Positions 1,850-47,091 of a DNA stretch of 64,000 nucleotides are shown here, piece after piece. Numbering within the stretch: the stretch's first letter is position 1; each line of letters opens with the position of its first letter. Made by a program: the position numbers and the translations under genes. The notes below the pieces were generated by a model that was not told the DNA's origin, did not search any database, and saw nothing but the letters and a program-made list of their open reading frames with translations. Location: positions 1 to 64,000 of the forward strand of contig NIVC01003345.1 of NCBI GenBank assembly GCA_002269645.1. Direction: 5' to 3'. This DNA is from Macrostomum lignano (lineage: Eukaryota).

Positions 1850-2581
1850 CATTGTACACTAGGAGCGCTATCGGGATGCAAAGGGCGACCATGGGCTGTT
1901 TTTGGGGGCTGCCAACGGCGCGTCGTGCGCTGTGGAGGCGTCTTAAGATACACCCTAAGACGCATGTGCAGCGTTATAAATTTCCGCTCACAATGATTCG
2001 GCCGTCAGCCACGGTGACGTCAAACAGCGGCCTGCCCGGATTTCCCGCTGTCGACAGCAGTGGAATCTCAGCAGCCCGTTCTGCCCTTCGTCGGCGTCCT
2101 TGGCTCGAATCTGCAGCACCGTCTGGCCGGCTCGTTCTTGATAAGAGACGCCAAACGACGCGCTATCGTTGCTATGGCCGGTTGTTAGGGACGCGGACGG
2201 AAACTGTACCGCCGGGGCGCAGTCGTTGACATCGATTAGATCGACGCGGACGTCGGCTGTGGCGGTGTGCTGCACCGAGGGACCGCGGCTGCTGCCCGAG
2301 TGCGAAGCCGGAAAGGCGCGATCGACCGCAAGGACTCGCAGCTCGTAGACCGCCTGGCGCTCGCGATCCAGCCGTGTCCGAGTGGTTAGGCGGCCGCTGT
2401 ACAAGTCCACGCTGAAGGAGTGCGCGTCGCGACTTGGCTGCAGTCTGTACCTGATGCCGCCCGTGTCCGGAATGTCGTCCGCGTCGACAGCTCGGACGCT
2501 TCCGAAGCCGGTGCCGGGAATGGCGTTCTCGGGCACACGGAACTGGTAGTAGGTCACGGGGACACCTGTAAGGGGGTTGAC
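1850..2581 (-). CDS. Protocadherin exon 4 (EC6 and EC7); frameshifted near 2065 and degenerate below about 1975 (lower boundary approximate)
   Basis: Acceptor TTTTCAG|GTC at 2581. Motifs VPENA, VDADD, LDRE, IDVNDCAP and KDADEGQNGLLRF are present. A shifted frame continues LLSTAGNPGRPLFDVTVADGRIIVSGNL. I could not identify TM or cytoplasmic exons. Confidence 0.75.
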
Positions 2582-2720
2582 CTGAAAAGTTTTCAGGGGA
2601 TTTTGGGTTAGTTTTTTGTACCGCATCTGTAAGGGAGAGGTGGAGACGAAAGAGCGAGAGGATAGAGGAAGAGAGTAAAAGAAATGTTGCACTAATTATT
2701 CGGGACACTAATTAACTCAC

Positions 2721-8566: not shown

Positions 8567-8959
8567 GTCCCAAGACAGAAGGATAGCAAGGACAGTAAAG
8601 GTGGCCAAAAAGTCCGACAGTGAGTATCAGCACTGCCCCGACCCCCAGAGAGCTCGCAGGAAGGCATTTAACCGGAGAGTAAAATTAATTAAAAGCTTGA
8701 TTTGAAGCGAACTGTGAGAATGCGCTCGAGTATGAAAGGCTTCCGCCTCTGGAGCATGAGTGAGCACGCTTTAAAGTAAAATAATGGTTCCCCGACGCTT
8801 TGATGTGTAGCTGAATCTGTTGAAAAAAGGATGCGAGACCTCTGCCTGCCCTGTTGCTGTGCCTCTTCATTTAATAATTCACTGCATTAGCCCGCGTCTC
8901 GCTGACAGGATAAGAGAAACTTGTTGACAGGGATAGAAAAGACATTTTGAGGAAAAATG

Positions 8960-11900
8960 CGTTGAGAGAGACAAGAGCAAGAGACATGAAAGAGACAAGG
9001 GACAGAGAGGAGAGACACGGGAGAGACAGAGACAGAGAGAGAGAGACAACAGAGAGACAATACAGATAGGGGAGAGACAAATGAGAGACAAGAGAGACAA
9101 AGGAGACAAGAGAGAGACAAGAGAGACAAGAAAGAGACAAGAGAGAGGCAAGGGAAAGACAAGAGAGAGACACGAGAGAGGCAAGGGAGAGACAAGAGAG
9201 AGACAAGAGAGAGGCAAGGGAGAGACAAGAGAGAGACAAGAGAGAGACAAGAGAGAGGCAAGGAAGAGACAAGAGAGAGGCAAGGGAGAGACAAGAGAGA
9301 GATGCAAGGGAGAGAGAGACATGAGAGAGGCAAGGGAGAGACAAGAGAGCGACAAGAGAGAGACAAGAGAGAGGCAAGGAAGAGACAAAGAGAGAGGCAA
9401 AGAGGAGGACAAGAGAGAGACAGGAGAGAGACAAGAGAGAGGCAAGGGAGAGACAAGAGAGAGGCAAGGGAGAGACAAGAGAGAGACAAGAGAGAGACAA
9501 GAGAGAGGCAAGGAAGAGACAAGAGAGAGGCAAGGGAGAGACAAGAGAGAGGCAAGGGAGAGACAAGAGAGAGACAAGAGAGAGACAAGAGAGAGAAAAG
9601 AGAGAGGCAAGGGAGAGGCAAGGGAGAGACAAGAGAGAGACACGAGAGAGGCAAGGGAGAGACAAGAGAGAGATGCAAGGGAGAGAGAGACATGAGAGAG
9701 GCAAGGGAGAGACAAGAGAGAGACAAGAGAGAGACAAGAGAGAGGCAAGGAAGAGACAAGAGAGAGGCAAGGGAGAGACAAGAGAGAGACAAGAGAGAGA
9801 CAAGAGAGAGACAAGAGAGAGACAATAGAGAGACAAGAGAGAGGCAAGGGAAAGACAAGAGAGAGGCAAGGGAGAGACAAGAGAGGCAAGGGAGAGACAA
9901 GAGAGAGGCAAGGGAGAGACAAGAGAGAGGCAAGGGAGAGACAAGAGAGAGGCAAGGGAGAGACAAGAGAGAGGCAAGGGAGAGACAAGAGAGAGGCAAG
10001 GAAGAGACAAGAGAGAGGCAAGGGAGAGACAAGAGAGAGATGCAAGGGAGAGAGAGACATGAGAGAGGCAAGGGAGAGACAAGAGAGAGACAAGAGAGAG
10101 ACAAGAGAGAGGCAAGGAAGAGACAAGAGAGAGGCAAGGGAGAGACAAGAGAGAGACAGGAGAGAGACAAGAGAGAGGCAAGGGAGAGACAAGAGAGAGG
10201 CAAGGGAGAGACAAGAGAGAGACAAGAGAGAGGCAAGGAAGAGACAAGAGAGAGGCAAGGGAGAGACAAGAGAGAGGCAAGGGAGAGACAAGAGAGAGAC
10301 AAGAGAGAGACAAGAGAGAGGCAAGGAAGAGACAAGAGAGAGGCAAGGGAGAGACAAGAGAGAGGCAAGGAAGAGACAAGAGAGAGACAAGGGAGAGACA
10401 AGAGAGAGACAAGAGAGAGGCAAGAGAGAGACATGAGAGAGACAAGAGAGAGGCAAGGAAGAGACAAGAGAGAGGCAAGGGAGAGAGAGACATGAGAGAG
10501 GCAAGGGAGAGACAAGAGAGAGATGCAAGGGAGAGAGAGACATGAGAGAGGCAAGGGAGAGACAAGAGAGAGACAAGAGAGAGACAAGAGAGAGGCAAGG
10601 AAGAGACAAGAGAGAGGCAAGGGAGAGACAAGAGAGAGACAGGAGAGAGACAAGAGAGAGGCAAGGGAGAGACAAGAGAGAGGCAAGGGAGAGACAAGAG
10701 AGAGACAAGAGAGAGACAAGAGAGAGGCAAGGAAGAGACAAGAGAGAGGCAAGGGAGAGACAAGAGAGAGGCAAGGGAGAGACAAGAGAGAGGCAAGGGA
10801 GAGACAAGAGAGAGGCAAGGAAGAGACAAGAGAGAGGCAAGGGAGAGACAAGAGAGAGATGCAAGGGAGAGAGAGACATGAGAGAGGCAAGGGAGAGACA
10901 AGAGAGAGACAAGAGAGAGACAAGAGAGAGGCAAGGAAGAGACAAGAGAGAGGCAAGGGAGAGACAAGAGAGAGGCAAGGGAGAGACAAGAGAGAGACAA
11001 GAGAGAGACAAGAGAGAGGCAAGGAAGAGACAAGAGAGAGGCAAGGGAGAGACAAGAGAGAGATGCAAGAGAGAGAGAGAGACATGAGAGAGGCAAGGGA
11101 GAGACAAGAGAGAGATGCAAGGGAGGGAGAGACAAGAGAGAGATGCAAGGGAGAGAGAGACATGAGAGAGGCAAGGGAGAGACAAGAGAGAGATGCAAGG
11201 GAGAGAGAGACATGAGAGAGGCAAGGAAGAGACAAGAGAGAGGCAAGGGAGAGACAAGAGAGAGGCAAGGGAGAGACAAGAGAGAGGCAAGGGAGAGACA
11301 AGAGAGAGGCAAGGGAGAGGCAAGAGAGAGACAATAGAGAGACAAGAGAGAGGCAAGAGAGAGACAAGAGAGAGGCAAGGGAGAGACAAGAGAGAGACAA
11401 GGGAGAGAAAGAGACAATAGAGAGACAAGAGAGAGGCAAGGGAGAGACAAGAGAGAGACAATAGAGAGACAAGAGAGAGACAAGAGAGAGACAAGAGAGA
11501 GGCAAGGGAGAGACAAGAGAGAGACAAGAGAGAGACAAGAGAGAGACAATAGAGAGACAAGAGAGAGGCAAGGGAAAGACAAGAGAGAGGCAAGGGAGAG
11601 ACAAGAGAGGCAAGGGAGAGACAAGAGAGAGGCAAGGGAGAGACAAGAGAGAGGCAAGGGAGAGACAAGAGAGAGGCAAGGGAGAGACAAGAGAGAGGCA
11701 AGGGAGAGACAAGAGAGAGGCAAGGAAGAGACAAGAGAGAGGCAAGGGAGAGACAAGAGAGAGATGCAAGGGAGAGAGAGACATGAGAGAGGCAAGGGAG
11801 AGACAAGAGAGAGGCAAGGGAGAGACAAGAGAGAGGCAAAGGAGAGACAAGAGAGAGGCAAGGGAGAGGCAAGGGAGAGACAAGAGAGAGACAAGGGAGA

Positions 11901-12770
11901 GAGAGAGACAATAGAGAGACAAGGGAGAGACAAGAGAGAGACAAGGGAGAGAAAGAGACAAGAGAGAGACAAGAGAGAGGCAAGGGAAAGACAAGAGAGA
12001 GACAATAGAGAGACAAGAGAGAGGCAAGAGAGAGACAAGAGAGAGACAAGAGAGAGACAAGAGAGAGGCAAGGGAGAGACAAGAGAGAGGCAAGGGAGAG
12101 GCAAGAGAGAGGCAAGAGAGAGACAAGATAGAGACAAGAGAGAGGCAAGGGAGAGACAAGAGAAAGGCAAGGGAGAGACAAGAGAGAGGCAAGGGAGAGA
12201 CAATAGAGAGACAATAGAGAGACAAGAGAGAGGCAAGGGAGAGACAAGAGAGAGGCAAGGGAGAGACAAGAGAGAGACACGAGAGAGGCAAGGGAGAGAC
12301 AAGAGAAAGGCAAGGGAGAGACACGAGAGAGGCAAGGGAGAGACAAGAGAGAGGCAAGGGAGAGACAAGAGAGAGACAAGAGAGAGGCAAGGGAGAGACA
12401 AAAGAGAGACAAGAGAGAGGCAAGGGAGAGACAAGAGAGAGGCAAGGGAGAGACAAGAGAGAGGCAAGGGAGAGACAAGAGAAAGGCAAGGGAGAGACAA
12501 GAGAGAGGCAAGGGAGAGACAAGAGAGAGGCAAGGGAGAGACAAGAGAGAGGCAAGGGAGAGACAAGAGAAAGGCAAGGGAGAGACAAGAGAGAGACAAG
12601 AGAGAGGCAAGGGAGAGAGAGACAAGAGAGAGGCAAGGGAGAGACAAGAGAGAAACAAGAGAGAGGCAAGGGAGAGACAAGAGAGAGACAAGATAGAGGC
12701 AAGGGAGAGACAAGAGAGAGGCAAGGGAGAGAGAGACAAGACAGACAACGGAGACAGGGGAGAGACAACT
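8960..12770. repeat. 3.8-kb purine-rich compound array (GAGAGACAA / GAGAGGCAAGG)
   Basis: Direct reading; generates the spurious 1300-1500 aa ORFs. Confidence 0.95.
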
Positions 12771-12804
12771 GAGAGGCAAGCAGAGTGGAGCAGCAGCCAC
12801 TGAC

Positions 12805-13346
12805 CTGAGCAGGCCATTCGCAGTCGAGTCCGGGTCCGCTGCAGCTGGCAGCGGGAAGGTGGCTCCAATCTTGCTATTCTCGGCCACCTTCAGCGTGAAC
12901 ATTGGGATGGAGAACTTGGGCGGGTGGTCGTTCCTGTCGATCACTTCCACTCTTACCCGGGCGATGTCGCTGCCACCTTTGTCGTCGACAATTGCGACGC
13001 GCAATTCAATAACGGCGCAGTTGACGTCGGAGTCTCCGACTGAGCACAGCTGCTCGCGGTCGATTTCGCGACGCAGAGTCAACACGGTGTCGCGCCGGCG
13101 GATGTCGAAGTATTCGCCGGAAAGACCGCCGCCGCTGCCTCCGCCGCCGAGCACTTTGAAGGTGGCAGCGGAGGCCGACATATCAGAGAGTCGGCATTCA
13201 CCGCGGCCGTCTCGTCGGCGCAGAGCGGTGCCCGCCAGAGCGTCGTCCAGCACCTCGCAGTCCAACCGCGAGGATGGCGAATCGGCGAGAGTCTCTGCTA
13301 CTAGGAGAACAAGCAGCAGGCAAACTGTTCTCGAATGGTGACTCAT
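12805..13346 (-). CDS. Protocadherin (delta1-like, 7 EC repeats), exon 1: signal peptide, EC1 and start of EC2
   Basis: ATG at 13346 gives MSHHSRTVCLLLVLLVAETLA (signal-like). Cadherin motifs IDRE, VIDRNDHPPKF, AENSKIG and ADPDS follow. Donor AG|GTCAGT at 12805/12804, phase 2. Confidence 0.9.
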
Positions 13347-13459
13347 TTGAGCCTGGTGTGTCTGGTCTGGTCTGCAATTAATCATCAGAGTAATAGGTGG
13401 CACCTTTGAAAGCTTTGCGGGAGAATGTTTTTGAGTGGCATCAAATGGGGGACGAGAAC

Positions 13460-14085
13460 AGAGAAAAGGAGAGAGAGGTGAAAGGAGAGGAGAGAGGGTA
13501 GAGGAGAGGGAGATGAGAGGGGAGAGGGGAGAAGAGAATGGAGAGAGGAGAGGAGACAGACGAGAGAGGAGAAGAGAGGTGTTGTGTTTTAGTTAATTGA
13601 ATTGAATTCAGTCAGTTGGAGACACTTGGGTCTCGCTCAATATATTTATAGTCAAAGCATGCACGATGAACATTACTCAATCGTTAGCTAGCATTGGCAC
13701 GTTAAACTGAACACTGATTGTGCAATAACTTATCAATAGATTTCAAAGCAAACTATTCAATGAATCATCATGCAACTAAATCACGTTGCACTGTCACAAC
13801 AAGAGGGGAGAGAGGAGAGAGGAGAGGGGAGAGAGGAGAGGGGAGAGAGGAGAGGGGAGAGAGGAGAGGGGAGAGAGGAGAGGGGAGAGAGGAGAGGGGA
13901 GAGAGGAGAGGGGAGAGAGGAGAGGGGAGAAAGGAGAGAGGAGAAGAGAGGGGAGAGAGGAGAGGGGAGAGAGAGGAGAGGGGAGAGAGGAGAGGGGAGA
14001 GGCGAGAGGGGAGAGAGGAGAAAGGAGAGAGGAGAAGAGAGGGAGAGAGGAGAGGGGAGAGAGGAGAGGGGAGAGAGGAGAGGGG
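13460..14085. repeat. Two GA-rich tracts (13460-13580; 14-bp GAGAGGAGAGGGGA at 13800-14085) flanking the putative protocadherin promoter
   Basis: Direct reading. Confidence 0.85.
13643..13650 (-). promoter_or_regulatory. Candidate TATA box of the protocadherin gene
   Basis: TATAAATA on the minus strand about 300 nt upstream of the ATG, flanked on both sides by GA-rich tracts. Confidence 0.35.
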
Positions 14086-27370: not shown

Positions 27371-27745
27371 GTGCGTTTGTTGGACGACAATAAGAGAAGT
27401 TTGCAATGCTCATCGGATACTGCAGTTTCAATAAATTAATAATCGTAAATTTCCTATTATTAATAGTAATACCAAATTCGGTTTTTTTCAACTGATAGAA
27501 CCGCTATGTCAATCTTGGCATCGAACGCTAAATCCTAACTAAATCTTGCTTTGAGGATGTGGCCCGAAAATCGCAGCCAATGACGAGAAACCACAGGCAA
27601 AGTTAAGAGAGAGCGGGCTGATGGCGTTGCTTAAAATGAGACTGAAAAAAAGCAGAAAAAGAAAATTCTGGATTGATAAAAAATCAGCGGCGATATCTAA
27701 GATCTATCAATTCCTCTATCATTCTATCAATCTATCAATCTGAGC

Positions 27746-28244
27746 ATGGACTCAAAGTTTAGATTCGGCATTGCTGACATACTGGGCGAGAATCTTCAAC
27801 GAAGTGGACGTCCAGAGTTCGAGTTCGCTGACCGACAGTCTGAAGCCTTCGATGCTCGAGGAGACCCTGACCGACAACGGGAGGGCCGTCCAGCTTCCGT
27901 TGATGAAGCCGAGGACAAAGCTGGGGTTGAAGGCGATGCCGCAGATGAAGACAGCGAAGATGACGACGGTTGCTATGGAGACGAAGCCGACGGGGAAGAG
28001 GATGAGCCGCTGACCGAGGAGCGACCGCCCGGAGCTGCCGGCTCATCTGCCGCCGCCGCCGCCGCCTGCGGCTTCCCGTTTCCTGGAATACCGACATCGT
28101 TTGCCGCTGCAGCAGCTGCGGCGGCGGCGGCGGCTGCTGCTGCTGCTGCGGCGTCGAGCTCGGGACCGCGGCTGGACCAGGCGAGCCAGCTGGCCTGGCT
28201 GTACCCGGGGCTGGTGAACCGGCAGGGCATGTTCGGACTGGGCG
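27746..28244 (+). CDS. NK-like (ANTP) homeobox gene, ceh-19/Abox-like, exon 1 with eh1 motif and poly-Ala
   Basis: MDSKFRFGIADILG contains FxIxxIL (eh1, 27764-27784), followed by acidic and poly-Ala tracts. Donor G|GTGAGC at 28244/28245, phase 1. Confidence 0.85.
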
Positions 28245-28399
28245 GTGAGCGAACCCGCGTCCGCGGGCTGGGCAATCGCAAGGGGAATTAGAGGGAATTG
28301 TTCGGAGAATCGCGCAGGGAATTGAAAAGGGATTTTGCCGGGAATCACGCGGTCAGGCAACGATAGCTCATGGGATCACTTGAAAAATTACGCAGTAAA

Positions 28400-31729: not shown

Positions 31730-32661
<932 letters not shown>

Positions 32662-37229: not shown

Positions 37230-37835
37230 AGAGGGGCGGAAGGAGAATCCGTCAGGGGGCGGAAGGAGAATCCGTCAGGGGGCGGAAGGAGAATCTGATA
37301 GGGGGCGGAAGGAGAATCCGATGGGGGGCGGAAGGAGAATCCGTCAGGGGCGGAAGGAGAATCCGATAGGGGCGGAAGGAGAATCCGATAGGGGGCGGAA
37401 GGAGAATCCGATAGGGGGCGGAAGGAGAATCCGATAGGGGGCGGAAGGAGAATCCGTCAGGGGGCGGAAGGAGAATCCGTCAGGGGGCGGAAGGAGAATC
37501 CGATAGGGGGCGGAAGGAGAATCCGTCAGGGGGCGGAAGGAGAATCCGTCAGGGGGCGGAAGGAGAATCCGTCAGGGGCGAAGGAGAATCCGATGGGGGG
37601 CGGAAGGAGAATCCGTCAGGGGGCGGAAGGAGAATCCGTCAGGGGCGAAGGAGAATCCGATGGGGGGCGGAAGGAGAATCCGTCAGGGGGCGGAAGAAGA
37701 ATCCGATAGGGGGCGGAAGGAGAATCCGATGGGGGGCGGAAGGAGAATCCGTTAGGGGGCGGAAGGAGAATCCGTCAGGGGCGGAAGGAGAATCCGTCAG
37801 GGGCGGAAGGAGAATCCGTCAGGGGGCGGAAGGAG
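37230..37835. repeat. 23-bp array (GGGGGCGGAAGGAGAATCCGTCA) just 3' of the nAChR stop
   Basis: Tandem units. Confidence 0.92.
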
Positions 37836-37891
37836 AGCCTCATAGAAATAGTTTCAAAAGTGCTCGGCAAGCCCTCAGCTCAGTGGGGTGC

Positions 37892-38505
37892 CTAGGCGAC
37901 CTTCTTGAACAGCGGCATGATGACCAGGATGATGATGGTGGACATGCAGGCGGCCAGCAGGAACAGCCAGAACAGCAGGCGGTCGACAATGAAGGCCAGC
38001 ATCCGCCAGTCGCTGATGATCATCTGGACGGCCTCGTCCTCGGCCTGACGGCGGATCAGCATCCGCAGGTGCCGCTGCAGCTGGTCGTACTGGCGCAGCC
38101 GACGGCGGTACAGCGGCACTGCGGGGTCGCCGCTGGGGCCGACCGGCGACGTCCCGACGGTCGTCGAGAATCTCGTCGAAGCAGTTGGCGACTTCTCCGC
38201 TGATGCGCCGTTGCAGGCGTCGGTCTCAGCGGTGTCGGCGTCGTCCAAGGCGGTGTCAGAGTCGCCGGCGCCGTACGCCAGCCGGCTCTGCGTCTCCTCG
38301 AAGCGCTGGCGCCGCCGACGCGCCTTGCGCTCGTAGCGCGCCACGGAGGACATGCAGAGCAGCGGCGCCAGACTGCGGAACAAAATCCGCTTGATGGCTG
38401 CCGGCACCGGCCGGTCGTTCGGGCCGATGTGGTGCAGGTGGAGCACGAACACCGTCAGGACGATCGACAGCGAGGTGGTGGACATTGTGACAGTCAGGTA
38501 GATGC
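37892..38505 (-). CDS. nAChR last exon (M3, intracellular loop, M4)
   Basis: GCCGCAG|GIYLTVTMSTTSLSIVLTVFVLHLHH...DWRMLAFIVDRLLFWLF...PLFKKVA*. Isoform A is 507 aa and isoform B is 525 aa. Confidence 0.95.
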
Positions 38506-38569
38506 CTGCGGCCCGGAGTTCAGGGTTGGTTTTTGAATTGAAGATTGAGACGAACTCAACCGAATTTTT

Positions 38570-39660
38570 ATTTAGGTAGATTGGGGCGGATTTAGGTAGA
38601 TTGGGGCGGATTTAGGTATATTGTAGCAAATTTAGGTAGATTGGGGTGGATTTAGGTAGATTGTAGCAAATTTAGGTAGATTGGGGCGGATTTAGGTAGA
38701 TTGGGGCGGATTTAGGTAGATTGGGGCGGATTTAGGTAGATTGGGGCGGATTTAGGTAGATTGGGGCGGATTTAGGTAGATTGTAGCAAATTTAGGTAGA
38801 TTGGGGCGGATTTAGGTAGATTGGGGCGGATTTAGGTAGATTGGGGTGGATTTAGGTAGATTGGGGCGGATTTAGGTAGATTGGGGCGGATTTAGGTAGA
38901 TTGTAGCAAATTTAGGTAGATTGGGGCGGATTTAGGTAGATTGGGGCGGATTTAGGTAGATTGGGGCAAATTTAGGTAGATTGGGGCGGATTTAGGTAGA
39001 TTGGGGCGGATTTAGGTAGATTGGGGCGGATTTAGGTAGATTGGGGCGGATTTAGGTAGATTGGAGCAAATTTAGGTAGATTGGGGCGGATTTAGGTAGA
39101 TTGTAGCAAATTTAGGTAGATTGGGGTGGATTTAGGTAGATTGTAGCAAATTTAGGTAGATTGGGGCGGATTTAGGTAGATTGGGGCGGATTTAGGTAGA
39201 TTGGGGCGGATTTAGGTAGATTGGGGCGGATTTAGGTAGATTGTAGCAAATTTAGGTAGATTGGGGCGGATTTAGGTAGATTGGGGCGGATTTAGGTAGA
39301 TTGGGGCAAATTTAGGTAGATTGGGGCGGATTTAGGTAGATTGGGGCGGATTTAGGTAGATTGGGGCGGATTTAGGTAGATTGGGGCGGATTTAGGTAGA
39401 TTGGGCGGATTTAGGTAGATTGGGGTGGATTTAGGTAGATTGGGGCGGATTTAGGTAGATTGGAGCAGATTTAGGTAGATTGAGGCGGATTTGAGTAGAT
39501 TGGGGTGGATTTAAGTAGATTGGGGAGAATTTAGGTAGATTGGAGCAGATTTAGGTAGATTGGAGCAGATTTAGGTAGATTGGTGCGGATTTAGGTAGAT
39601 TGGAGCATATTTAGGTAGATTGGGGCGGATTTGAGTAGATTGGGGCGGATTTGAGTAGAT
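38570..39660. repeat. 20-bp array (ATTTAGGTAGATTGGGGCGG)
   Basis: Fills the last nAChR intron. Confidence 0.95.
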
Positions 39661-39780
39661 TTAACTGTAATGATTAGATACGAACTCCAATTTCAGATTG
39701 GTATTGAAACAATGGCTCCACGATGCTCTCAAAGACAGGAATAAAAAGCTTCAATAAACAGCGATGAGCTGAGCTCTCAC

Positions 39781-40039
39781 CAATGAGCGGAACGAATTCG
39801 CTAGTGGCTGGCATGTTCTCAGCAATGAGCAGCATGAACACTGAGAAGGCCAGCAGCACCGTGATGCCCAGGGTGATCTTCTCGCCCGAATCCGGCGGCA
39901 GCCAGAATCCCAGCAGGCTGAGAACGGTGAGCCACAGGCAGGGAAAGATGATGTTGAACAGGTAGTAAAGGGTTCGGCGTCTGATCACGATGTGGAACTT
40001 GATGTCCGGGTAGGGTACCGGACTGATTGGGTAGATGGT
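39781..40039 (-). CDS. nAChR common exon (loop C without vicinal Cys, M1, M2)
   Basis: CCGCAG|TIYPISPVPYPDIKFHIVIRRRTLYYLFNIIFPC...LPPDSGEKITLGITVLLAFSVFMLLIAENMPATSEFVPLI|GTGAGA. The GEK motif indicates cation selectivity. Confidence 0.95.
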
Positions 40040-40084
40040 CTGCGGGTTGAGCATGGCGCACATTATTGCGAGGGTGGTACACTT

Positions 40085-40820
40085 GGGAGAGAGATGAAAT
40101 GCCAAGATAGGGTGGAGGCTCAGAGTGTACATCCGGGGGAGAGAGATGAAATGCCAAGATAGGGTGGAGTGCTCAGAGTGTACATCCGGGGGAGAGAGAT
40201 GAAATGCGAAGATAAGGTGGAGGCTCAGAGTGTACATTCGGGGAGAGAGATGAAATGCGAAGATAGGGTGGAGGGCTCAGAGTGTACATCCGGGGGAGAG
40301 AGATGAAATGCCAAGATAGGGTGGAGTGCTCAGAGTGTACATTCGGGGAGAGAGATGAAATGCGAAGATAAGGTGGAGGGCTCAGAGTGTACGTTCGGGA
40401 GAGAGATGAAATGCGAAGATAGGGTGGAGGCTCAGAGTGTACGTTCGGGAGAGAGAGATGAAATGCCAAGATAGGGTGTAGGGCTCAGAGTGTACATTCG
40501 GGGAGAGAGATGAAATGCGAAGATAGGGTGGAGGCTCAGAGTGTACATTCGGGAGAGAGAGATGAAATGCCAAGATAGGGTGTAGGGCTCAGAGTGTACA
40601 TTCGGGGAGAGAGATAAAATGCCAAGATAGGGTGGAGGGCTCAGAGTGTACATCCGGGGGAGAGAGATGAAATGCGAAGATAGGGTGGAGGGCTCAGAGT
40701 GTACATCCGGGGGAGAGAGATAAATTGCCAAGAAAAGGTGGAGGGCTCAGAGTGTACGTTCGGGAGAGAGATGAAATGCCAAGATAGGGTGGAGGCTCAG
40801 AGTGTACGTTCGGGAGAGAC
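40085..40820. repeat. ~52-bp minisatellite
   Basis: Fills the nAChR intron before the loop C exon. Confidence 0.92.
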
Positions 40821-40949
40821 ACTTGCCCGTGCAAACGCATTGTTATTATTAGAAACTTAAAAATCAAAAGTTGATTGTTTCAAAAAGTTGATCAACCTAT
40901 AGAACTTGGAGACTAACACAATTATTTTATCATTAATTAATAGTCTCAC

Positions 40950-41028
40950 CTCCTGTCGCTCCACATCGATTCTAATCAGATTCCACTCTCCACTTTGAAC
41001 ATAATTTTGAAAGTCAACCTCATCCCGC
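40950..41028 (-). CDS. nAChR common exon (loop F)
   Basis: TTTCAG|G-RDEVDFQNYVQSGEWNLIRIDVERQE|GTGAGA. Confidence 0.9.
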
Positions 41029-41117
41029 CTGAAATTTTAGTTTTCGCGATTTACTCTGAGTAGCATGAATTGAGTTTTTCGTCTTTCCAATTGAAAAAGG
41101 CTAAAAAATCTTCTCAC

Positions 41118-41315
41118 TTCTTGGTGATGTTAACTTGAAATCCGTCGTAGGTCCACGAGCCGAATTTCATCGTGCACACCTGGTCGTCGAATGGGAAATA
41201 AGTGATGTCGATTTTGCAGGTCGATCTGAGCTTGGCCGGCGGCGGCCAGAACACGGTGCCGTTGGCATCGACCATCGCCTTGCTCTGCATGTAGCCCGTG
41301 GTGAAGTCATCGGCG
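41118..41315 (-). CDS. nAChR common exon (Cys-loop, loop B)
   Basis: [65 protein letters not shown], containing the C-x13-C loop. Donor GTGAGA. Confidence 0.95.
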
Positions 41316-41474
41316 CTAAAAAAAGTAAAAAAAATTGTAATTAAAATTCAGTAAATTGTCAAATCAGAAATTTTTTAAGCGATTTAAATCTTTTTCCGGC
41401 ACTTTTACAAAAAACGGCAACAAAATGCTCAACTTGTCTACTAATAGTCAGTAGCAAAACTCGGACAGGCTCAC

Positions 41475-41584
41475 CTATTATAAAGTACAATATCGGGCAG
41501 CCAAATCTTCTGACAGGGAATGCGCAAGATTTCCAATCCGTTGTACTCCTTGGGATCCCAGTGGAGTCGCTCGTCGTGCCATTC
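41475..41584 (-). CDS. nAChR common exon (110 nt, loop A)
   Basis: TTTCTAG|EWHDERLHWDPKEYNGLEILRIPCQKIWLPDIVLYN|GTGAGC, phase 2. Confidence 0.93.
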
Positions 41585-41809
41585 CTAGAAATAGGAGGGA
41601 ATCGGGGCTGCTCGCGATCGCTGCTAAACTGTTTAGCATAATTGTCCTAGAAATGCTATCCAGGCTTGTCAGCTAAGATCTAATTTGAATAGAATTTCAT
41701 TTGCAAAATCTTGAGTCTGTTGAAATACAAACTCTGTTCTACAATGCAAGGATCACTAGTAGTCCTTGATGGGGCAGGCTTGATATTGGTTTGACAACTT
41801 TGTCAACCG

Positions 41810-42320
41810 GAATCTTCACCAGCCCGAATCTTCACTAATCTGAATTTCACCAACCCAAATCTTCATCAACCCGAATTTTCACCAACCCGAATCGTCACCA
41901 ACCCGAATCTTCACCAACCCGAATCTTCACCAACCCAAATCTTCAATAACCTGAATCTTCACCAACCCGAACCTTCACTAATCCGAATCTTTACAAACCC
42001 GAATCTTCACCAACCCAAATCTTCAATCCGAACCTTCACTAACCCGAATCTTCACCAACCCGAATCTTCACCAACCCAAATCTTCAATAACCCGAACCTT
42101 CACTAATCCGAATCTTTACAAACCCGAATCTTCACCAACCCGAATCTTCAATAACCTGAATCTTCACCAACCCGAACCTTCACTAATCCGAATCTTTACA
42201 AACCCGAATCTTCACCAACCCGAATCTTCAATCCGAATATTCACTAATCCGAATCTTCACCAATCCGAATCTTTACTGACTAGAATCTTCACATACCCGA
42301 ATCTTCACCAACCTGAATAA
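41810..42320. repeat. ~16-bp array (ACCAACCCGAATCTTC)
   Basis: In an nAChR intron. Confidence 0.88.
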
Positions 42321-42714
42321 GCAGATTTTTACTATCCTATCCTTAAAGTCTTCTAACATCCTTTCGTACAAACCCGGCCATCGGATGCCGATAAAAAATC
42401 CCCAAAAAGTTTTACACTGCCAATCCCAAGTAGGTGGGAACGCAGGCAGTTGCCGTTGCGAGTCATAAACGAAAGTTATCGTTTATTTCAACACTCGACA
42501 CCTGTCAAGATATTGGCAGTTAAGCCAAGTGCAGCTGCACAGATATTTTTTCAATGCAGACACGGAGACTGTAAATGCCTGACGATTAGAAAGTCAAAGT
42601 ACACCCAGTGTGAGCATGTGTTTGAGTGCTGTGCCTGAGTACAGTATTGGCTCACTTGCATGCGCTCAGGAGCTAGCGGATAGATCCCAGGAAAACAAGC
42701 ACAGCTAGACTCAC

Positions 42715-42759
42715 CTGCTCCAGCCAGACATTGGTAGTCAGCACTTGGTTAACCTCATC
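42715..42759 (-). CDS. nAChR common exon (45 nt, loop D)
   Basis: TTTCAG|DEVNQVLTTNVWLEQ|GTGAGT. Confidence 0.92.
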
Positions 42760-43069
42760 CTGAAAGTTAATCATTTTTTCGTAAAGGATTCAGACAACTA
42801 GAAGACTATCAGAAGACAGTAAAAGCCAGGATTCAGTCACGACTATCCCTATGATTTCCCAGAAGACTTGATGCGGATGAAAAAATTCTTTTAATCTTTT
42901 AATCCTGAATTCTTTGATCTATCTTTCGAGACTAAATTAGCTACTGTACATGTGAATGCGGAGACTGCGAGGAATACCATGGACTCTTAATTATACTTGT
43001 AAATCTGGATTGGAAACTTTTATGATTCATTTAAAAGATTGGAAAACTGAATTTAGCAGACATGAGATG

Positions 43070-43390
43070 CAGAAGGAGATGCAGATGGAGATGCAGAGGG
43101 AGATAAAGAGGGAGACACAGGAGATGCAGAAGGAGATGCAGATGGAGATGCAGATGGAGATGCAGATGGAGACACAGGAGATGCAGGAGATGTAGAGGAT
43201 GCGGCAGAGGGAGATTCAGAGGATGCGGCAGAGGGAGATGCAGATGGAGACAGAGAGGGAGCTACAGGAGAGGCAGATGGAGACAGAGAGGGAGCTACAG
43301 GAGAGGCAGATGGAGACAGAGAGGGAGCTACAGGAGAGGCAGATGGAGACAGAGAGGGAGCTACAGGAGAGGCAGATGGAGACAGAGGAA
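43070..43390. repeat. Purine-rich 12-bp and 33-bp repeats
   Basis: GAGATGCAGATG units, then GAGACAGAGAGGGAGCTACAGGAGAGGCAGATG units. Confidence 0.85.
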
Positions 43391-43959
43391 GGACAGCCAG
43401 ACACAGTCGGTCCCCACTCCAGACCCAATATCGCAGGCCTCCATGACTGGCATCAAATCGATTCCAGCCACTGTTGAGTCCCTCAGATTTGCTGCACGAA
43501 CGGACACAACTAATTCAAGATAATAGATAAGAGGGTGAAGTGAGATTCCGCACTCAACCCTACTCTCGCTACACTGTCACACTGCTAGGACGCTAAATTA
43601 GACACCCGTCTATCTGCCCAGATCCCCACTGAGTAAGAGATGTAGAGTGGCTTGTGAGAGGAGGCAGAATCCTCGCATTGCAATTTCAGACTCCGCCGCA
43701 TCCCTACTTCATCTACTCTATCTTCCTTATCTATTCTAATAGTTTCTTGAGCTTGTTTTGCAGATAATCCAGTGGTTGCTGTTGTTGCACCGGGCATGCG
43801 GAGCCTTCTGCTCATCCGGTGTGAGGGCTGAGAGTTCGCGTCTTCAGCTCATTATTGTGAGCGCAGAAAAGACGCAGCCAAGTGGCATAATCCAGGATGA
43901 CTAGCTGAGAGGCTGAATGAGAAGCTGAGGGAGATGCAGAAGAGGTAGAGGGAAAGAGG

Positions 43960-44377
43960 GCAGGCAGAGGGCCGGAGGGGCAGGCAGAGGGGCGGAGGGG
44001 CAGGCAGAGGGGCGGAGGGGCAGGCAGAGGGGCGGAGGGGCAGGCAGAGGGGCGGAGGGCAGGCAGAGGGGCGGAGGGCAGGCAGAGGACGGAGGGGCAG
44101 GCAGAGGGGCGGAGGGCAGGCAGAGGGGCGGAGGGGCAGGCAGAGGGGCGGAGGGCAGGCAGAGGGGCGGAGGGCAGGCAGAGGGGCGGAGGGCAGTCAG
44201 AGGGGCGGAGGGCAGGCAGAGGGGCGGAGGGCAGGCAGAGGGGCGGAGGGCAGGCAGAGGGGCGGAGGGCAGGCAGAGGGGCGGAGGGCAGGCAGAGGGG
44301 CGGAGGGCAAGCAGAGGGGCGGAGGGCAGGCAGAGGGGCGGAGGGGCAGGCAGAGGGGCGGAGGGCAGGCAGAGGGG
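43960..44377. repeat. 19-20-bp G-rich array (GGCAGAGGGGCGGAGGGCA)
   Basis: Starts about 9 nt after the isoform B exon 2 donor. Confidence 0.92.
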
Positions 44378-44385
44378 ACACTGAC

Positions 44386-44543
44386 CATGTCTGTAATGAG
44401 GATGAGGGCGAACCCGAAGCGCACTGTGACCTGGTCGGAAGCGTTAATGACCGGCCTCACGGAGGGGTCATAGCGGATCATGAGGTTCTCCATGAGCTGC
44501 TGCTCGTCAGGTTTTTGTTTGCCCGTGCCGAGGCGCCTGTCGC
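44386..44543 (-). CDS. nAChR-like subunit, isoform B exon 2 (alpha1 helix + beta1)
   Basis: Acceptor CTCTTCAG|GC at 44543 (phase 1). Reads DEQQLMENLMIRYDPSVRPVINASDQVTVRFGFALILITDM. Donor ATG|GTCAGT at 44386/44385, phase 0. Confidence 0.88.
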
Positions 44544-44959
44544 CTGAAGAGCGAATGAGCATTTCTTGTTTTTTTGTTTGATTGACAGCCGATGTAGTCT
44601 GACTGTTTTCATTGCTTATTACCTTAATTAAAAGCCGAACATTACACCTTTTGCAGCCTATTTAACACTACAGGCATATTTATTAATTATTGATTAGAAA
44701 GTTTCCAGTGAACACTGAATCCTGAGCTGCCTTAGCTGAGTACAGTGACTGAATCCTGAGCTGCCTTCTACAAAACCAGTTCCGCCCAAGCTACAAGAGA
44801 ACCAATTAAGAGATTAAGGAAATTCCGCCAGGGTTTTTATGCAACCCCTGAATCCTTTATTCAATCAGCTTTTTAGTTTGATGCCCGAAAAGCAGAAATT
44901 CTGCAACTCGATGTCCAGACTCCCTGACGGCAGCGGCTTTGCCCAATGGCGATGCTCAC

Positions 44960-45178
44960 CAACTGGGATATCTGCACCATCGCAATCTGGAACCGGACTT
45001 CCAGCGTTGCCGACGCATCAATGGTGGGCCTGGATGCCGGCTCGTAGCCCGTGAGCAGGTGGGTGAGCAGCCGCTGCTCATCTGTGACCGCGGCCGACGG
45101 CTCTGCTGTCGAACAGGCCACCAAAGAGGACTCAAGAAGGCCAGCAAACAGACAGACTATGACGTTCAGATGTGGCAT
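44960..45178 (-). CDS. nAChR-like subunit, isoform A first exon (signal peptide + alpha1 helix + beta1)
   Basis: MPHLNVIVCLFAGLLESSLVA...DEQRLLTHLLTGYEPASRP...VRFQIAMVQISQL. Donor TTG|GTGAGC at 44960/44959, phase 0. Confidence 0.85.
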
Positions 45179-45236
45179 TCTTTAGCTTAGAGTGAAATTT
45201 CCCGACTTTCTTTTGCAACCTCTGTTTGTCCGCTCG

Positions 45237-45244
45237 TATATATA
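45237..45244 (-). promoter_or_regulatory. TATA-like element upstream of nAChR isoform A
   Basis: TATATATA lies 59-66 nt upstream of the ATG at 45178. Confidence 0.35.
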
Positions 45245-45609
45245 GAAGAAAATCTATTTAGACACATGCGTGCCAAGCTGGCTACTTATATGAGTAGAAG
45301 GCACTGTCTAGAGGTCATTTTTTCTTTGAAGAGGATAAATGGGAAAAATCAATGAATAAAATCTACGAAATCTCAAGTCCACTTGACTCGAAGCTGTAAT
45401 GTTCATGTCCAAAATCACTTGGCCGATGTCTGTCTGTCTTTTCTATTTGAACTGGCTATAGAGTCTTGAAGATATGAAAGCTGAACTTGAGTCTGTCAAT
45501 CATAATCTGATGGAATCACCGCTTTAGGAAATCTCCCTGCCTGATCTTCTGCAGAGCCATTCGTGACTTACTGGGGAAAATTATGGTAAGGGGGAAATGC
45601 GCACCCGAA

Positions 45610-46290
45610 ACTGCGCATCACAAACTGCACATCACAAACTGCACATCACAAACTGCACATCACAAACTGCACATCACAAGCTGCACGTCACAAGCTGCAC
45701 ATCACAAACTGCACATCTCAAACTGCATATCACAAGCTGCACATCTCAAACTGCACATCTCAAACTGCACATCTCAAACTGCATATCCCAAACTGCACAT
45801 CTCAAACTGCATATCACAAGCTGCACATCTCAAACTGCACATCTCAAACTGCACATCACAAACTGCACATCTCAAACTACACATCACAAACTGCACATCA
45901 CAAACTGCATATCACAAGCTGCACATCTCAAACTACACATCACAAACTGCACATCTCAAACTGCATATCACAAGCTGCACATCTCAAACTGCACATCTCA
46001 AACTGCACATCTCAAACTGCACATCTCAAACTGCACATCTCAAACTGCACATCTCAAACTGCATATCACAAGCTGCACATCTCAAACTGCACATCTCAAA
46101 CTGCACATCTCAAACTGCACATCTCAAACTGCATATCACAAACTGCATATCACAAACTGCATATCACAAGCTGCACATCTCAAACTGCACATCTCAAACT
46201 GCACATCTCAAACTGCACATCTCAAACTGCATATCACAAACTGCACATCTCAAACTGCACATCACAAACTGCACATCACAAACTACACAT
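45610..46290. repeat. 14-bp array (CACATCTCAAACTG)
   Basis: Lies between the two alternative first exons. Confidence 0.92.
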
Positions 46291-46446
46291 CACCTAAATT
46301 TGAATATCTAAATTAAAATTTTACATTGCATTGTTTTGTTTCGACTATATAATTTACTAAGCTATTATAGGATCTTTCTAGGAAAATACGCCTAATTTAA
46401 CAGGTATAAAAGTAAGAATTTGATAAAATACATTTGAATAACTCAC

Positions 46447-46561
46447 TAGAATTGGTAGTATCAGCAGTGGAGCAGAAGATCACATCGCAGAAAACAATAA
46501 TAATGGACAAATTAATTACTAAAAGTCTAGAGAACTTATTCAAGCACCAGTGAGGTACCAT
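46447..46561 (-). CDS. nAChR-like subunit, isoform B exon 1 (signal peptide)
   Basis: ATG at 46561 gives MVPHWCLNKFSRLLVINLSIIIVFCDVIFCSTADTTNS. Consensus donor A|GTGAGT at 46447/46446 is phase 1, matching the phase-1 acceptor at 44543. Confidence 0.7.
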
Positions 46562-47091
46562 GGTGCTCAGCCTTAGGCCATTGATTGCTCCAAAAAGTCT
46601 CCAGTCAAACCTGGCATTTCGCCTTGACTCTCGGGAGCTTGTAGAGCTATAAAAAAGGATTTTTTGGTCAGCCAATCAACAGACACACTGCCCGTGCAGA
46701 TTTGCGAGCTCTCTACCTTCAGTCAGTCAGTCTTATGAAATGAAAATCCAGATCTTAATCCCCCGGAAAAACCTGGGGCTAGAGGGCCAACTGGGCGCAC
46801 CTGTCAGCAAGTCCCCCGGCTTCCTTGAAGTCTTGAGCTATACGGGAAGTCTTGAATAAGTGCAACTCCTCAAGAGAAGTCTCGAACTCTCTGCTCTGAG
46901 AAAGATCCTGCTTAGTTAAGTTAGGTATTCTTCCTGAGTGTGGATTTTTGTCATGCTCTTCGTCTGAGTAATGTTTGCACACTTCTAAGCATTTCTCTTT
47001 CAGAGAAGACAGGTCATGCTATGCTACCTAAATGTACGAGTGTGAATTACAATGCACAGGTGCATAGTTAAGAAAGCACAAAAATGCAGAT

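What the first reader, a model, noticed from the sequence alone, without database searches (positions are those of the whole stretch)
42715..46561. Nicotinic receptor gene with two phase-locked alternative N-termini (duplicated alpha1/beta1 module, two signal peptides)
Seen: two paralogous modules lie upstream of the single 45-nt DEVNQ exon. Module A (45178-44960) is one exon carrying its own signal peptide, DEQRLLTHLLTGYEPASRP and VRFQIAMVQISQL. Module B is two exons: a signal exon (46561-46447, phase 1) and a second exon (44543-44386) with DEQQLMENLMIRYDPSVRP and VRFGFALILITDM. Module A is nested in the first intron of B. Both end in phase 0 before the shared exon. A-to-B splicing is phase 0 into phase 1, so the two are mutually exclusive. 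Only B has N-glycosylation sequons here: NAS (A has DAS) and NSS formed across its first junction. Established: the N-terminal helix affects pentamer assembly, and beta1 (loop G) contributes to the complementary ligand-binding face. Mutually exclusive exons are known in insect Cys-loop genes (Rdl, nAChR alpha6), but those are internal cassettes. Inference: one locus makes two subunits with different assembly and pharmacology from two promoters, an arrangement I do not know from a flatworm-type nAChR.
Basis: partly seen in the sequence, partly recalled or inferred. Interest (0 to 1): 0.8.

Follow-up and report, generated by a model that had tools for sequence, protein, structure and literature searches.

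The report
Ancient dual N-termini of a nicotinic receptor
A flatworm nicotinic acetylcholine receptor gene really does encode two mutually exclusive front ends, but the same nested layout occurs in the same gene of nemerteans, brachiopods, molluscs and another flatworm, so it is an old, conserved and apparently undescribed design rather than a flatworm oddity.

Summary
Exon A (45178-44960) has its own ATG and signal peptide. B1 (46561-46447, phase 1) and B2 (44543-44386) form the second module. Both modules end in phase 0 before the shared 45-nt DEVNQ exon (42759-42715). Splicing A to B2 shifts the frame and hits a stop. The gene is a complete eight-exon, non-alpha nAChR subunit of a macrostomid flatworm.

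The arrangement is not flatworm-specific. Lineus, Lingula and Patella have the identical nested order and intron phases. Their RefSeq X1/X2 isoforms differ exactly in this N-terminal module. Haliotis, Octopus, Biomphalaria and Owenia show the same isoform pairs. A second flatworm contig and Macrostomum lignano protein models also keep both modules. Two trematode loci show only the A-like exon.

Both modules look constrained: 76% and 86% identity to M. lignano, against 27-36% in the intracellular loop.

Two promoters and functional differences between the isoforms remain inference. No transcript data for this species were available.

I also found a 14-nt inverted repeat that could loop out B2 in A-initiated transcripts. 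This is a hypothesis only.

I rate it a new variant of a known kind, of moderate interest.

The parts
46447..46561 (-). Exon B1. Type I signal-peptide exon: 115 nt, ATG in ACCATGG context, ends in phase 1, donor CTA|GTGAGT.
   Evidence: It is the only non-repeat ATG / hydrophobic / phase-1-donor candidate in 13.5 kb upstream of B2. Lineus, Lingula and Patella have a separate phase-1 signal exon in the same relative position. This is the weakest part: GC3 is only 0.45 and there is no cross-species sequence match.
45608..46291 (.). 14-bp minisatellite array filling most of the intron between B1 and exon A.
45237..45244 (-). TATATATA, 66 nt upstream of exon A's ATG. Candidate core element of an internal promoter (inference only).
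   Evidence: Read from the sequence. No transcript data.
44960..45178 (-). Exon A. Type II first exon: own ATG and signal peptide, then helix alpha1, the alpha1-beta1 loop (DAS, no sequon) and strand beta1 ending QISQL. 219 nt, ends in phase 0, donor TTG|GTGAGC.
   Evidence: 76% identical to the M. lignano counterpart. GC3 is 0.71. Clusters with the trematode first exons at 82% bootstrap.
44745..44758 (-). Arm 1 of a 14-nt perfect inverted repeat (RNA CAGGAUUCAGUCAC), in the 416-nt spacer intron between A and B2.
44386..44543 (-). Exon B2. Type I module exon: starts in phase 1 and ends in phase 0. It encodes a basic linker (DRRLGTGKQK), helix alpha1, the NAS sequon and strand beta1 ending ITDM. 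Acceptor CTCTTCAG|, weak donor ATG|GTCAGT.
   Evidence: 86% identical to the M. lignano counterpart. GC3 is 0.81.
42827..42840 (-). Arm 2 of the inverted repeat (RNA GUGACUGAAUCCUG), ending 67 nt upstream of the acceptor of the shared exon.
42715..42759 (-). Shared 45-nt exon DEVNQVLTTNVWLEQ (beta1-beta2 loop and beta2), phase 0 at both ends.
   Evidence: Identical peptide in Lineus and Lingula; the Patella peptide differs at one residue.
37892..41584 (-). Common body of the gene. Exons are 41584-41475, 41315-41118 (Cys-loop), 41028-40950, 40039-39781 (loop C without the vicinal cysteines, then TM1 to the start of TM3) and 38505-37892 (rest of TM3, intracellular loop, TM4, stop).

Best explanation
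The window carries a macrostomid flatworm ortholog of a conserved spiralian nAChR subunit gene. RefSeq calls this gene 'alpha-10-like'. Its beta1-beta2 loop reads DEVNQ.

- a distal signal-peptide exon ending in phase 1 (B1);
- then, inside the first intron, a self-contained first exon with its own ATG, signal peptide, helix alpha1 and strand beta1 (A, 'type II');
- then, after a short spacer, the homologous module exon that needs B1 (B2, 'type I');
- then the shared 45-nt exon.

How it most likely works:
- Transcripts starting upstream of B1 splice B1>B2>exon 3. Exon A has no usable in-frame acceptor, so it is removed with the intron.
- Transcripts starting just upstream of A splice A>exon 3 and skip B2.
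- A>B2 products are frameshifted, carry an early stop, and would be degraded.

The result is two subunits that are identical from DEVNQ onward. They differ in the signal peptide, the pre-helix extension (longer, basic and glycosylated in B), helix alpha1, the alpha1-beta1 loop glycan (NAS in B, lost in A) and strand beta1.

Shown: the exon anatomy, the phases, the homology, the conservation of both modules, and the conservation of the architecture across phyla.

Inferred: use of both 5' ends in this species, the internal promoter, and any functional difference.
For: Anatomy and phases.

Both modules look like constrained coding sequence:
- GC3 is 0.71 (A) and 0.81 (B2), against intron GC of 0.40-0.42.
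- A versus B2 is saturated at synonymous sites (pS 0.75) but not at replacement sites (pN 0.38).
- Identity to the corresponding modules in M. lignano models P0023/P0157 is 76% for A and 86% for B2. The intracellular loop of the same proteins is only 27-36% identical.

The same nested order and the same phases occur in Lineus L004, Lingula L005 and Patella L006. Splicing those exons rebuilds both RefSeq isoforms exactly. The spacer between the two modules is 37, 191 and 60 nt there.

Isoform pairs that differ only in this module also exist in Haliotis, Octopus, Biomphalaria and Owenia.

A second flatworm-like contig, L007, has both modules 29 nt apart.

Short Logan contigs of 1.5-2.7 kb encode full-length (P0016, P0024) or near-full-length (P0026) spliced proteins of each type. 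In molluscs each type is therefore joined to DEVNQ in real cDNA.

In no species do the two modules group as sisters. Window A groups with the trematode first exons at 82% bootstrap.
Against: - No RNA evidence for this species or for any Macrostomum was reachable. Use of both 5' ends here is inferred.
- B1 has weak coding statistics (GC3 0.45) and no sequence-level ortholog match.
- The 42-residue module tree does not resolve deep nodes, so 'one ancient duplication' rests mainly on the shared architecture.
- I could not inspect the RNA-seq support behind the RefSeq models.
- With a 416-nt spacer there is no steric block here. How A-initiated transcripts avoid the good B2 acceptor is unexplained, apart from the candidate RNA duplex.
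Confidence: 0.82

Rival explanations
1. Only one module is still used in this species. The other is a decaying relic of the ancestral pair, as appears to have happened to type I in the two trematodes examined.
For: Fasciola and Schistosoma loci show only the A-like first exon, so loss does happen in flatworms. B1 has weak coding statistics, and B2 has a non-consensus donor, GTCAGT.
Against: Both open reading frames, all splice sites and the phase logic are intact. Both modules are 76-86% identical to M. lignano, while the unconstrained loop is 27-36%. B2 has the higher GC3 of the two.
Confidence: 0.08
2. The duplicated N-terminus is a flatworm-specific innovation. This is the novelty the first reader implied.
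For: A and its M. lignano and trematode counterparts share a derived QISQL/QINQL ending that is not seen outside flatworms.
Against: The same nested exon order, the same intron phases and the same two isoforms occur in Nemertea, Brachiopoda and Mollusca. An annelid has the same isoform pair.
Confidence: 0.02
3. Both modules are included in tandem in one protein, as several public gene models show (M. lignano P0023/P0157, Nucella P0025, L007 P0179).
For: Those models exist.
Against: In the window, A>B2 gives a frameshift and a stop. In L007 the model needs a non-canonical join across a 29-nt spacer that has normal GTGAGT...CAG ends. RefSeq models never include both modules. Two stacked alpha1/beta1 modules have no counterpart in the solved receptors that matched.
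Confidence: 0.02
4. One promoter, upstream of B1, serves both isoforms. Exon A gets its 5' end by spliced-leader trans-splicing inside intron 1, in competition with B1>B2 cis-splicing.
For: About 30% of M. lignano genes are SL trans-spliced (PMC8629364). AG dinucleotides lie 1 and 7 nt upstream of A's ATG.
Against: Those AGs (CTAAG, TAAAG) do not fit the YTNCAG trans-splice motif. The M. lignano leader ends in ATG, which would be out of frame at the next candidate acceptor, ACAAACAG. A TATATATA sits 66 nt upstream of A's ATG.
Confidence: 0.12
5. Add-on mechanism: in this species the spacer has grown to 416 nt, so a 14-bp RNA duplex loops out B2 in A-initiated transcripts. One arm lies in the spacer (44758-44745). 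The other lies 67 nt upstream of exon 3 (42840-42827). In B1-initiated transcripts the first arm would be removed with intron 1.
For: It is the only inverted repeat of 14 nt or more in 42600-45300. The motif occurs only at these two sites in the 64 kb. A complement of 14 nt or more between the two introns appeared in 2 of 500 dinucleotide shuffles. The two arms, joined artificially, fold at -29.5 kcal/mol. B2 has a weak donor.
Against: It was found post hoc, in a single species. Lingula, with a 191-nt spacer, has no analogous complement. Conservation in other Macrostomum genomes could not be checked.
Confidence: 0.22

Closest known systems
RefSeq X1/X2 isoforms of the orthologous 'alpha-10-like' nAChR gene in Lineus longissimus, Lingula anatina, Patella vulgata, Haliotis, Octopus and Biomphalaria
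   Same: Same orthogroup, 75-79% identical in the ligand-binding core. In the three species whose loci I read (Lineus, Lingula, Patella) the exon order, the phases and the shared 45-nt exon are the same. Each has one isoform with a basic pre-helix linker built from two exons, and one built from a single self-contained first exon. For Haliotis, Octopus and Biomphalaria I compared the isoforms at the protein level only.
   Different: The window's spacer is much longer: 416 nt against 37-191 nt. Its A module has lost the NAS sequon and ends in QL, not DM. The macrostomid protein has lost the loop-C cysteine pair that all those orthologs keep.
GABRB3 (GABA-A beta3) alternative first exons 1 and 1A
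   Same: A Cys-loop receptor gene with two alternative first exons that encode dissimilar signal peptides and are differentially expressed (PMC1934366).
   Different: [quoted passage not shown] Here the alternatives are homologous copies of a structural module (alpha1, glycan loop, beta1), one of them is split by a phase-1 intron, and they are nested.
Mutually exclusive internal exons of insect Cys-loop genes (nAChR alpha6 exon 3a/3b, Rdl exons 3 and 6). From my own knowledge, not retrieved here.
   Same: Tandem homologous exons in the ligand-binding domain, with exactly one used per mRNA.
   Different: Those are equal-length internal cassettes with common exons on both sides and a single promoter. 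Here one alternative is itself a first exon with its own start codon, and exclusivity comes from a phase mismatch (plus a tiny intron in some species).
CHRFAM7A (dup-alpha7). Its sequence appears among the solved structures, entry 9qto.
   Same: A nicotinic subunit whose N-terminal exons are replaced while the rest of the subunit is kept.
   Different: That is a separate, human-specific fusion gene with non-homologous FAM7A exons, as the entry name shows. The rest of what I say about it is from my own knowledge. It is not an alternative 5' end within one locus.

Membership tests
Cys-loop (pentameric) ligand-gated channel, nicotinic receptor subunit | Neur_chan_LBD plus Neur_chan_memb domains | tested here: met
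   ligand-binding domain E=6e-67 (A) and 1e-67 (B). Membrane domain E=1.5e-44.
Cys-loop (pentameric) ligand-gated channel, nicotinic receptor subunit | Cys-loop C-x13-C, and the cation-type GEK motif before M2 | tested here: met
   [15 protein letters not shown] and DSGEKITLGITVLL in the assembled protein. Best solved relatives are alpha7, alpha4 and alpha3 nAChRs, E about 1e-83.
alpha-type nAChR subunit | Vicinal cysteine pair in loop C (YxCC) | tested here: not met
   The window has ERQETIYPISPVPYPD. Orthologs have, for example, VKYACCDEPYPD. M. lignano also lacks the pair.
Spiralian 'DEVNQ' nAChR orthogroup with dual N-terminal modules | Nested order: type I signal exon, type II first exon, type I module exon, 45-nt exon | tested here: met
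   the window matches Lineus, Lingula and Patella.
Spiralian 'DEVNQ' nAChR orthogroup with dual N-terminal modules | Phases: signal exon ends in phase 1, both modules end in phase 0, and type II joined to the type I module gives a premature stop | tested here: met
   in all four species.
Spiralian 'DEVNQ' nAChR orthogroup with dual N-terminal modules | Both junctions to the 45-nt exon are used in mRNA | not testable with these tools
   No transcript data for this species. In molluscs, short Logan cDNA-like contigs carry each type.
Alternative-promoter / alternative-first-exon gene | Two independent transcription start sites | not testable with these tools
   Only a TATATATA 66 nt upstream of A's ATG.
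Classical mutually exclusive exon cassette (insect alpha6 or Rdl type) | Homologous alternative exons of equal length and phase, flanked by common exons on both sides | tested here: not met
   The exons are homologous. But A is a 219-nt first exon with its own ATG, B2 is a 158-nt internal exon that starts in phase 1, and there is no common upstream exon.

The most novel reading that the evidence does not exclude
A single nicotinic receptor gene has kept two alternative N-terminal helix/beta1 modules, each with its own signal peptide, since before flatworms, nemerteans, brachiopods, molluscs and annelids diverged. Exclusivity is hard-wired by a phase 0 / phase 1 clash plus, in several lineages, a spacer too short to be an intron. 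On this reading the two isoforms define functionally distinct receptor populations, for example different partners, tissues or synaptic anchoring. In this species, where the spacer has grown, a long-range RNA duplex has taken over the job of skipping B2. As far as my searches reached, none of this is described in the literature.
Probability: 0.35. Interest if true: 0.72.

Novelty: new variant of a known kind. Interest (0 to 1): 0.55.

Why it matters
The alpha1 helix, the alpha1-beta1 glycan loop and strand beta1 are implicated in subunit biogenesis and assembly and in the complementary face of the binding site. I checked only that the module aligns to this part of solved alpha7.

A gene that has held two versions of this module for hundreds of millions of years suggests that receptor diversity in spiralians is generated at this position, not only by gene duplication.

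It also gives a clean natural experiment: two subunits identical from DEVNQ onward that can be expressed side by side.

On the practical side, several public gene models wrongly fuse the two modules into one protein (M. lignano, Nucella, the L007 contig). That would mislead phylogenies and any target analysis built on those models.

The trematode orthologs examined show only the A-like version. That is worth knowing for anyone comparing free-living and parasitic flatworm cholinergic receptors.

Tried and rejected
The only B hit of note was an annelid-like gene, L001.
- M. lignano DNA is not on record. Intron sizes, dN/dS and the 14-nt arms therefore could not be compared within Macrostomum.
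- The shorter RefSeq isoforms are not indexed, and the Haliotis locus is too long to fetch.
- A possible nAChR-homeobox microsynteny with L001 was rejected. L001 has a TALE-type homeobox gene, while the window gene has a standard homeodomain by Pfam and, on my reading, an ANTP-class recognition helix.
- The longer acceptor for exon 7 (40081) was rejected, because the M. lignano proteins match the short form.
- An RNA bridge analogous to the window's was looked for in Lingula and not found.
- No type I signal exon lies in the 2.5 kb available upstream in L007.
- SL trans-splicing onto B2 was considered. The acceptor fits YTNCAG, but the leader's ATG would be out of frame and there would be no signal peptide.
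- The paralogous 'DEKNQ' nAChR group was checked. Its RefSeq isoforms do not show dual modules.
- Literature searches found no description of this architecture.
Full report
**1. The observation**

Reading 42600-46800 on the minus strand and translating the stated intervals confirms every sequence detail.
- Exon A (45178-44960) is 219 nt. It starts at an ATG, encodes a hydrophobic signal-like stretch and then TDEQRLLTHLLTGYEPASRPTIDASATLEVRFQIAMVQISQL, and ends in phase 0 at TTG|GTGAGC.
- B1 (46561-46447) is 115 nt, with an ACCATGG start context and a phase-1 donor CTA|GTGAGT.
- B2 (44543-44386) is 158 nt, with acceptor CTCTTCAG| and donor ATG|GTCAGT. B1+B2 is 273 nt, so B2 also ends in phase 0.
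- The shared exon (42759-42715) is 45 nt, DEVNQVLTTNVWLEQ.
- A joined to B2 reads ...QISQLATGASARANKNLTSSSSWRTS*, a premature stop.

The modules are homologous beyond chance. In the whole 64-kb window each finds only itself and the other one (E=2e-8, 41% identity), and there is no third copy.

**2. The gene**

Downstream exons were located from open frames and assembled with canonical splice sites. They are 41584-41475 (110 nt), 41315-41118 (Cys-loop), 41028-40950, 40039-39781 (loop C, then TM1 to the start of TM3) and 38505-37892 (rest of TM3, intracellular loop, TM4, stop). The two isoforms are 507 aa (A) and 525 aa (B).

Pfam finds Neur_chan_LBD and Neur_chan_memb in both isoform queries. 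The closest solved structures are alpha7, alpha4 and alpha3 nAChRs. The alternative module aligns to mature alpha7 residues 3-43. On my reading of the solved structures, that span is helix alpha1, the N24 glycan site and strand beta1.

Loop C reads ERQETIYPISPVPYPD. It lacks the vicinal cysteines, so by definition this is a non-alpha subunit.

**3. The organism**

The best hits are Macrostomum lignano proteins.
- The exon 3-6 core is 96% identical to P0157.
- The intracellular loop is only 27-36% identical.
- No 100% match exists.

The window is therefore from a close relative of M. lignano, not from M. lignano as deposited.

**4. Both modules are conserved**

M. lignano models P0023 and P0157 contain an A-like and a B-like module one after the other.
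- Window A is 76% identical to the A-like copy, and window B is 86% identical to the B-like copy. A and B are 41% identical to each other.
- The constrained TM4 is 67-79% identical between the species, and the loop 27-36%.
- Within the window, A and B2 are 53% identical at the nucleotide level and 31% at third positions. Synonymous sites are saturated (pS 0.75), while pN is 0.38.
- Both modules have the high GC3 of the other coding exons (0.71 and 0.81), against intron GC of 0.40-0.42.

This is an old duplication with both copies under protein-level constraint.

B1 is the weakest part. Its GC3 is 0.45. However, it is the only non-repeat candidate of the right kind in the 13.5 kb upstream of B2.

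**5. The key result: the architecture is ancient**

Listing the cluster members of the best non-flatworm orthologs shows RefSeq isoforms X1/X2 that differ exactly in the N-terminus and share the DEVNQ exon. This holds in Lineus, Haliotis, Patella, Lingula, Octopus and Biomphalaria, and the annelid Owenia has the same kind of pair.

The two types are:
- Type I: a basic linker before (I)PDEQ.
- Type II: the signal peptide running almost straight into (P)TDEQRL.

I fetched three loci and mapped the exons. Each has this order:
- a type I signal exon ending in phase 1;
- a long intron;
- a type II exon with its own ATG, ending in phase 0;
- a short spacer;
- a type I module exon running from phase 1 to phase 0;
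- a long intron;
- the 45-nt exon.

rebuilds both RefSeq isoforms from these exons in all three species and in the window. It also shows that type II spliced to the type I module gives a premature stop in every case. The spacer is 37 nt in Lineus, 60 nt in Patella, 191 nt in Lingula and 416 nt in the window.

A profile search of 1.84 billion representatives returned many ORFs or models from gastropods and a bivalve with the two modules side by side. It also returned P0179, whose locus L007 has both modules 29 nt apart and whose core is closest to the flatworm proteins.

Fasciola and Schistosoma loci have only a single A-like first exon and no B-like exon at E<=1.

A neighbour-joining tree of the 42-residue modules is weak at depth.
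- Window A, M. lignano A and the trematode exons group at 82% bootstrap.
- Window B and M. lignano B group at 100%.
- In no species are the two modules sisters.

The paralogous 'DEKNQ' group lacks such isoform pairs.

Short Logan contigs of 1.5-2.7 kb encode full-length (P0016, P0024) or near-full-length (P0026) spliced proteins of each type. In molluscs each type is therefore joined to DEVNQ in real cDNA.

**6. How it most likely works**
- Transcripts that begin upstream of B1 use B1's donor. Exon A has no in-frame acceptor: the AGs at -1 and -7 give immediate stops when joined to B1. The first productive acceptor is therefore B2's, and then exon 3 follows.
- Transcripts that begin just upstream of A use A's donor and must skip B2. 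A TATATATA lies 66 nt before A's ATG.
- With spacers of 29-37 nt (L007, Lineus), and probably 60 nt (Patella), the intron is likely too short to splice. That is my inference. The phase clash is a second lock in all species.

In the window the spacer is 416 nt, so skipping B2 needs another cause.
- B2's donor (GTCAGT) departs from the GT[G/A]AG that is typical of M. lignano (PMC8629364).
- I found one 14-nt perfect inverted repeat. One arm lies in the spacer (44758-44745). The other ends 67 nt upstream of exon 3 (42840-42827).
- The motif occurs nowhere else in the window.
- A complement that long arose in 2 of 500 shuffles.
- The arms, joined artificially, fold at -29.5 kcal/mol.

Such a duplex would loop out B2. 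In B1-initiated transcripts the first arm would be removed with intron 1. This was found post hoc, in a single species, and Lingula has no analogue. I give it about 0.2.

Spliced-leader trans-splicing as the source of A's 5' end is possible in principle, because about 30% of M. lignano genes are trans-spliced. However, the local AGs do not fit the YTNCAG motif.

**7. What differs between the isoforms**
- The signal peptide.
- The pre-helix extension, which is longer, basic and carries the NSS sequon in B.
- Helix alpha1.
- The conserved NAS glycan site, kept in B and lost in A. It is also lost in M. lignano A (IHAG) and in Fasciola (YVAS).
- Strand beta1.

The functional consequences (assembly, trafficking, the complementary binding face) are inference from the position of these elements.

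**8. Comparison with what is known, and novelty**

Alternative first exons encoding different signal peptides are known in a Cys-loop gene, GABRB3 exons 1 and 1A (PMC1934366). Mutually exclusive internal exons are known in insect receptors (my own knowledge).

This case is a hybrid. The alternatives are homologous structural modules, one of them is itself a first exon, they are nested, and they are phase-locked. The design is conserved across at least four phyla at the DNA level, and in a fifth, Annelida, at the isoform level.

The isoforms are present in RefSeq. I found no paper describing the architecture. The large survey of lophotrochozoan nAChRs does not use the words isoform or alternative, and 'splic' occurs only in its reference list.

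I therefore rate it a new variant of a known kind. The conserved architecture is the more interesting finding.

**9. Limits**
- There is no transcript evidence for this species.
- No Macrostomum DNA was available for comparison.
- I did not inspect the evidence behind the RefSeq models.
- The species behind L007 is unknown.

Noticed in passing
window 40004-40039 (-), start of exon 7: Loop C reads TIYPISPVPYPD. The vicinal cysteine pair (Y-x-C-C) present in the other orthologs I read (trematodes, nemerteans, molluscs, brachiopod, annelids) is replaced by I-S here and in M. lignano. An alpha-type subunit appears to have become non-alpha in macrostomids, while the loop A, B and C aromatic residues are kept.
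   Followed up: partly
window 37233-37836, 38570-39661, 40085-40819, 41804-42318, 43060-43387, 43956-44377, 45608-46291: Most introns of the gene, and the stretch just past the stop codon, carry their own distinct minisatellite array (periods 14-57 bp, 79-99% matches). One array starts 9 nt after the B2 donor.
   Followed up: no
M. lignano P0023 and P0157, Nucella P0025, L007 P0179, P0176: Public gene models fuse the two alternative modules into one protein. In the locus I could read (L007, 29-nt spacer) this comes from forcing a join across the short spacer. These are annotation errors that add a second alpha1/beta1 module to the protein.
   Followed up: partly
L002 (Fasciola hepatica) and L003 (Schistosoma intercalatum): The trematode orthologs have one long first exon (signal, long linker, A-like module ending QINQL/QISQL). 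No B-like exon was detectable in the 20-30 kb before the 45-nt exon. Type I was apparently lost in these parasites.
   Followed up: partly
Type I isoforms P0124, P0010, P0022, P0019, P0149: The type I pre-helix linker is strongly basic in several phyla (KKKRRNK, RHRRKKLEKPHR, RRHRRHHVEHRR, HRSRRIRKGREIK, GRGRRSVKNAR). It resembles proprotein-convertase sites, so there may be a cleaved propeptide. The window's B linker (DRRLGTGKQK) is only weakly basic.
   Followed up: no
P0180 and P0199: Two ORFs from other nAChR genes (beta1 ending IFDF/IFDV and ILDI/ILGV) also carry two alpha1/beta1 modules in tandem, each followed by a GT-like read-through. Duplication of this exon may have happened more than once in the family.
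   Followed up: no
L005 (Lingula) 1233-1308 and 10001-10076: The type I signal exon and its flanks are present twice, 8.8 kb apart and nearly identical. This is either an assembly duplication or a real second copy of the distal first exon.
   Followed up: no
window 27701-28288 (+) and 31951-32658 (+): A homeobox gene lies convergent to the nAChR gene. The second ORF matches the Pfam Homeodomain at E=5e-15 (...[18 protein letters not shown]). The first ORF has an FGIADIL (eh1-like) motif and alanine runs.
   Followed up: partly
window 1991-2695 (-) and 8874-13592 (-): Cadherin-domain coding sequence (Pfam Cadherin, E=9e-25 at 1991-2695). The 1573-codon open frame at 13592-8874 begins cadherin-like and then runs through about 3.5 kb of a low-complexity LSLxS repeat without a stop.
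   Followed up: partly
window 44543 acceptor: The B2 acceptor CTTCAG fits the M. lignano trans-splice acceptor motif YTNCAG. However, the leader's terminal ATG would be out of frame, so trans-splicing there would not give a productive mRNA.
   Followed up: yes
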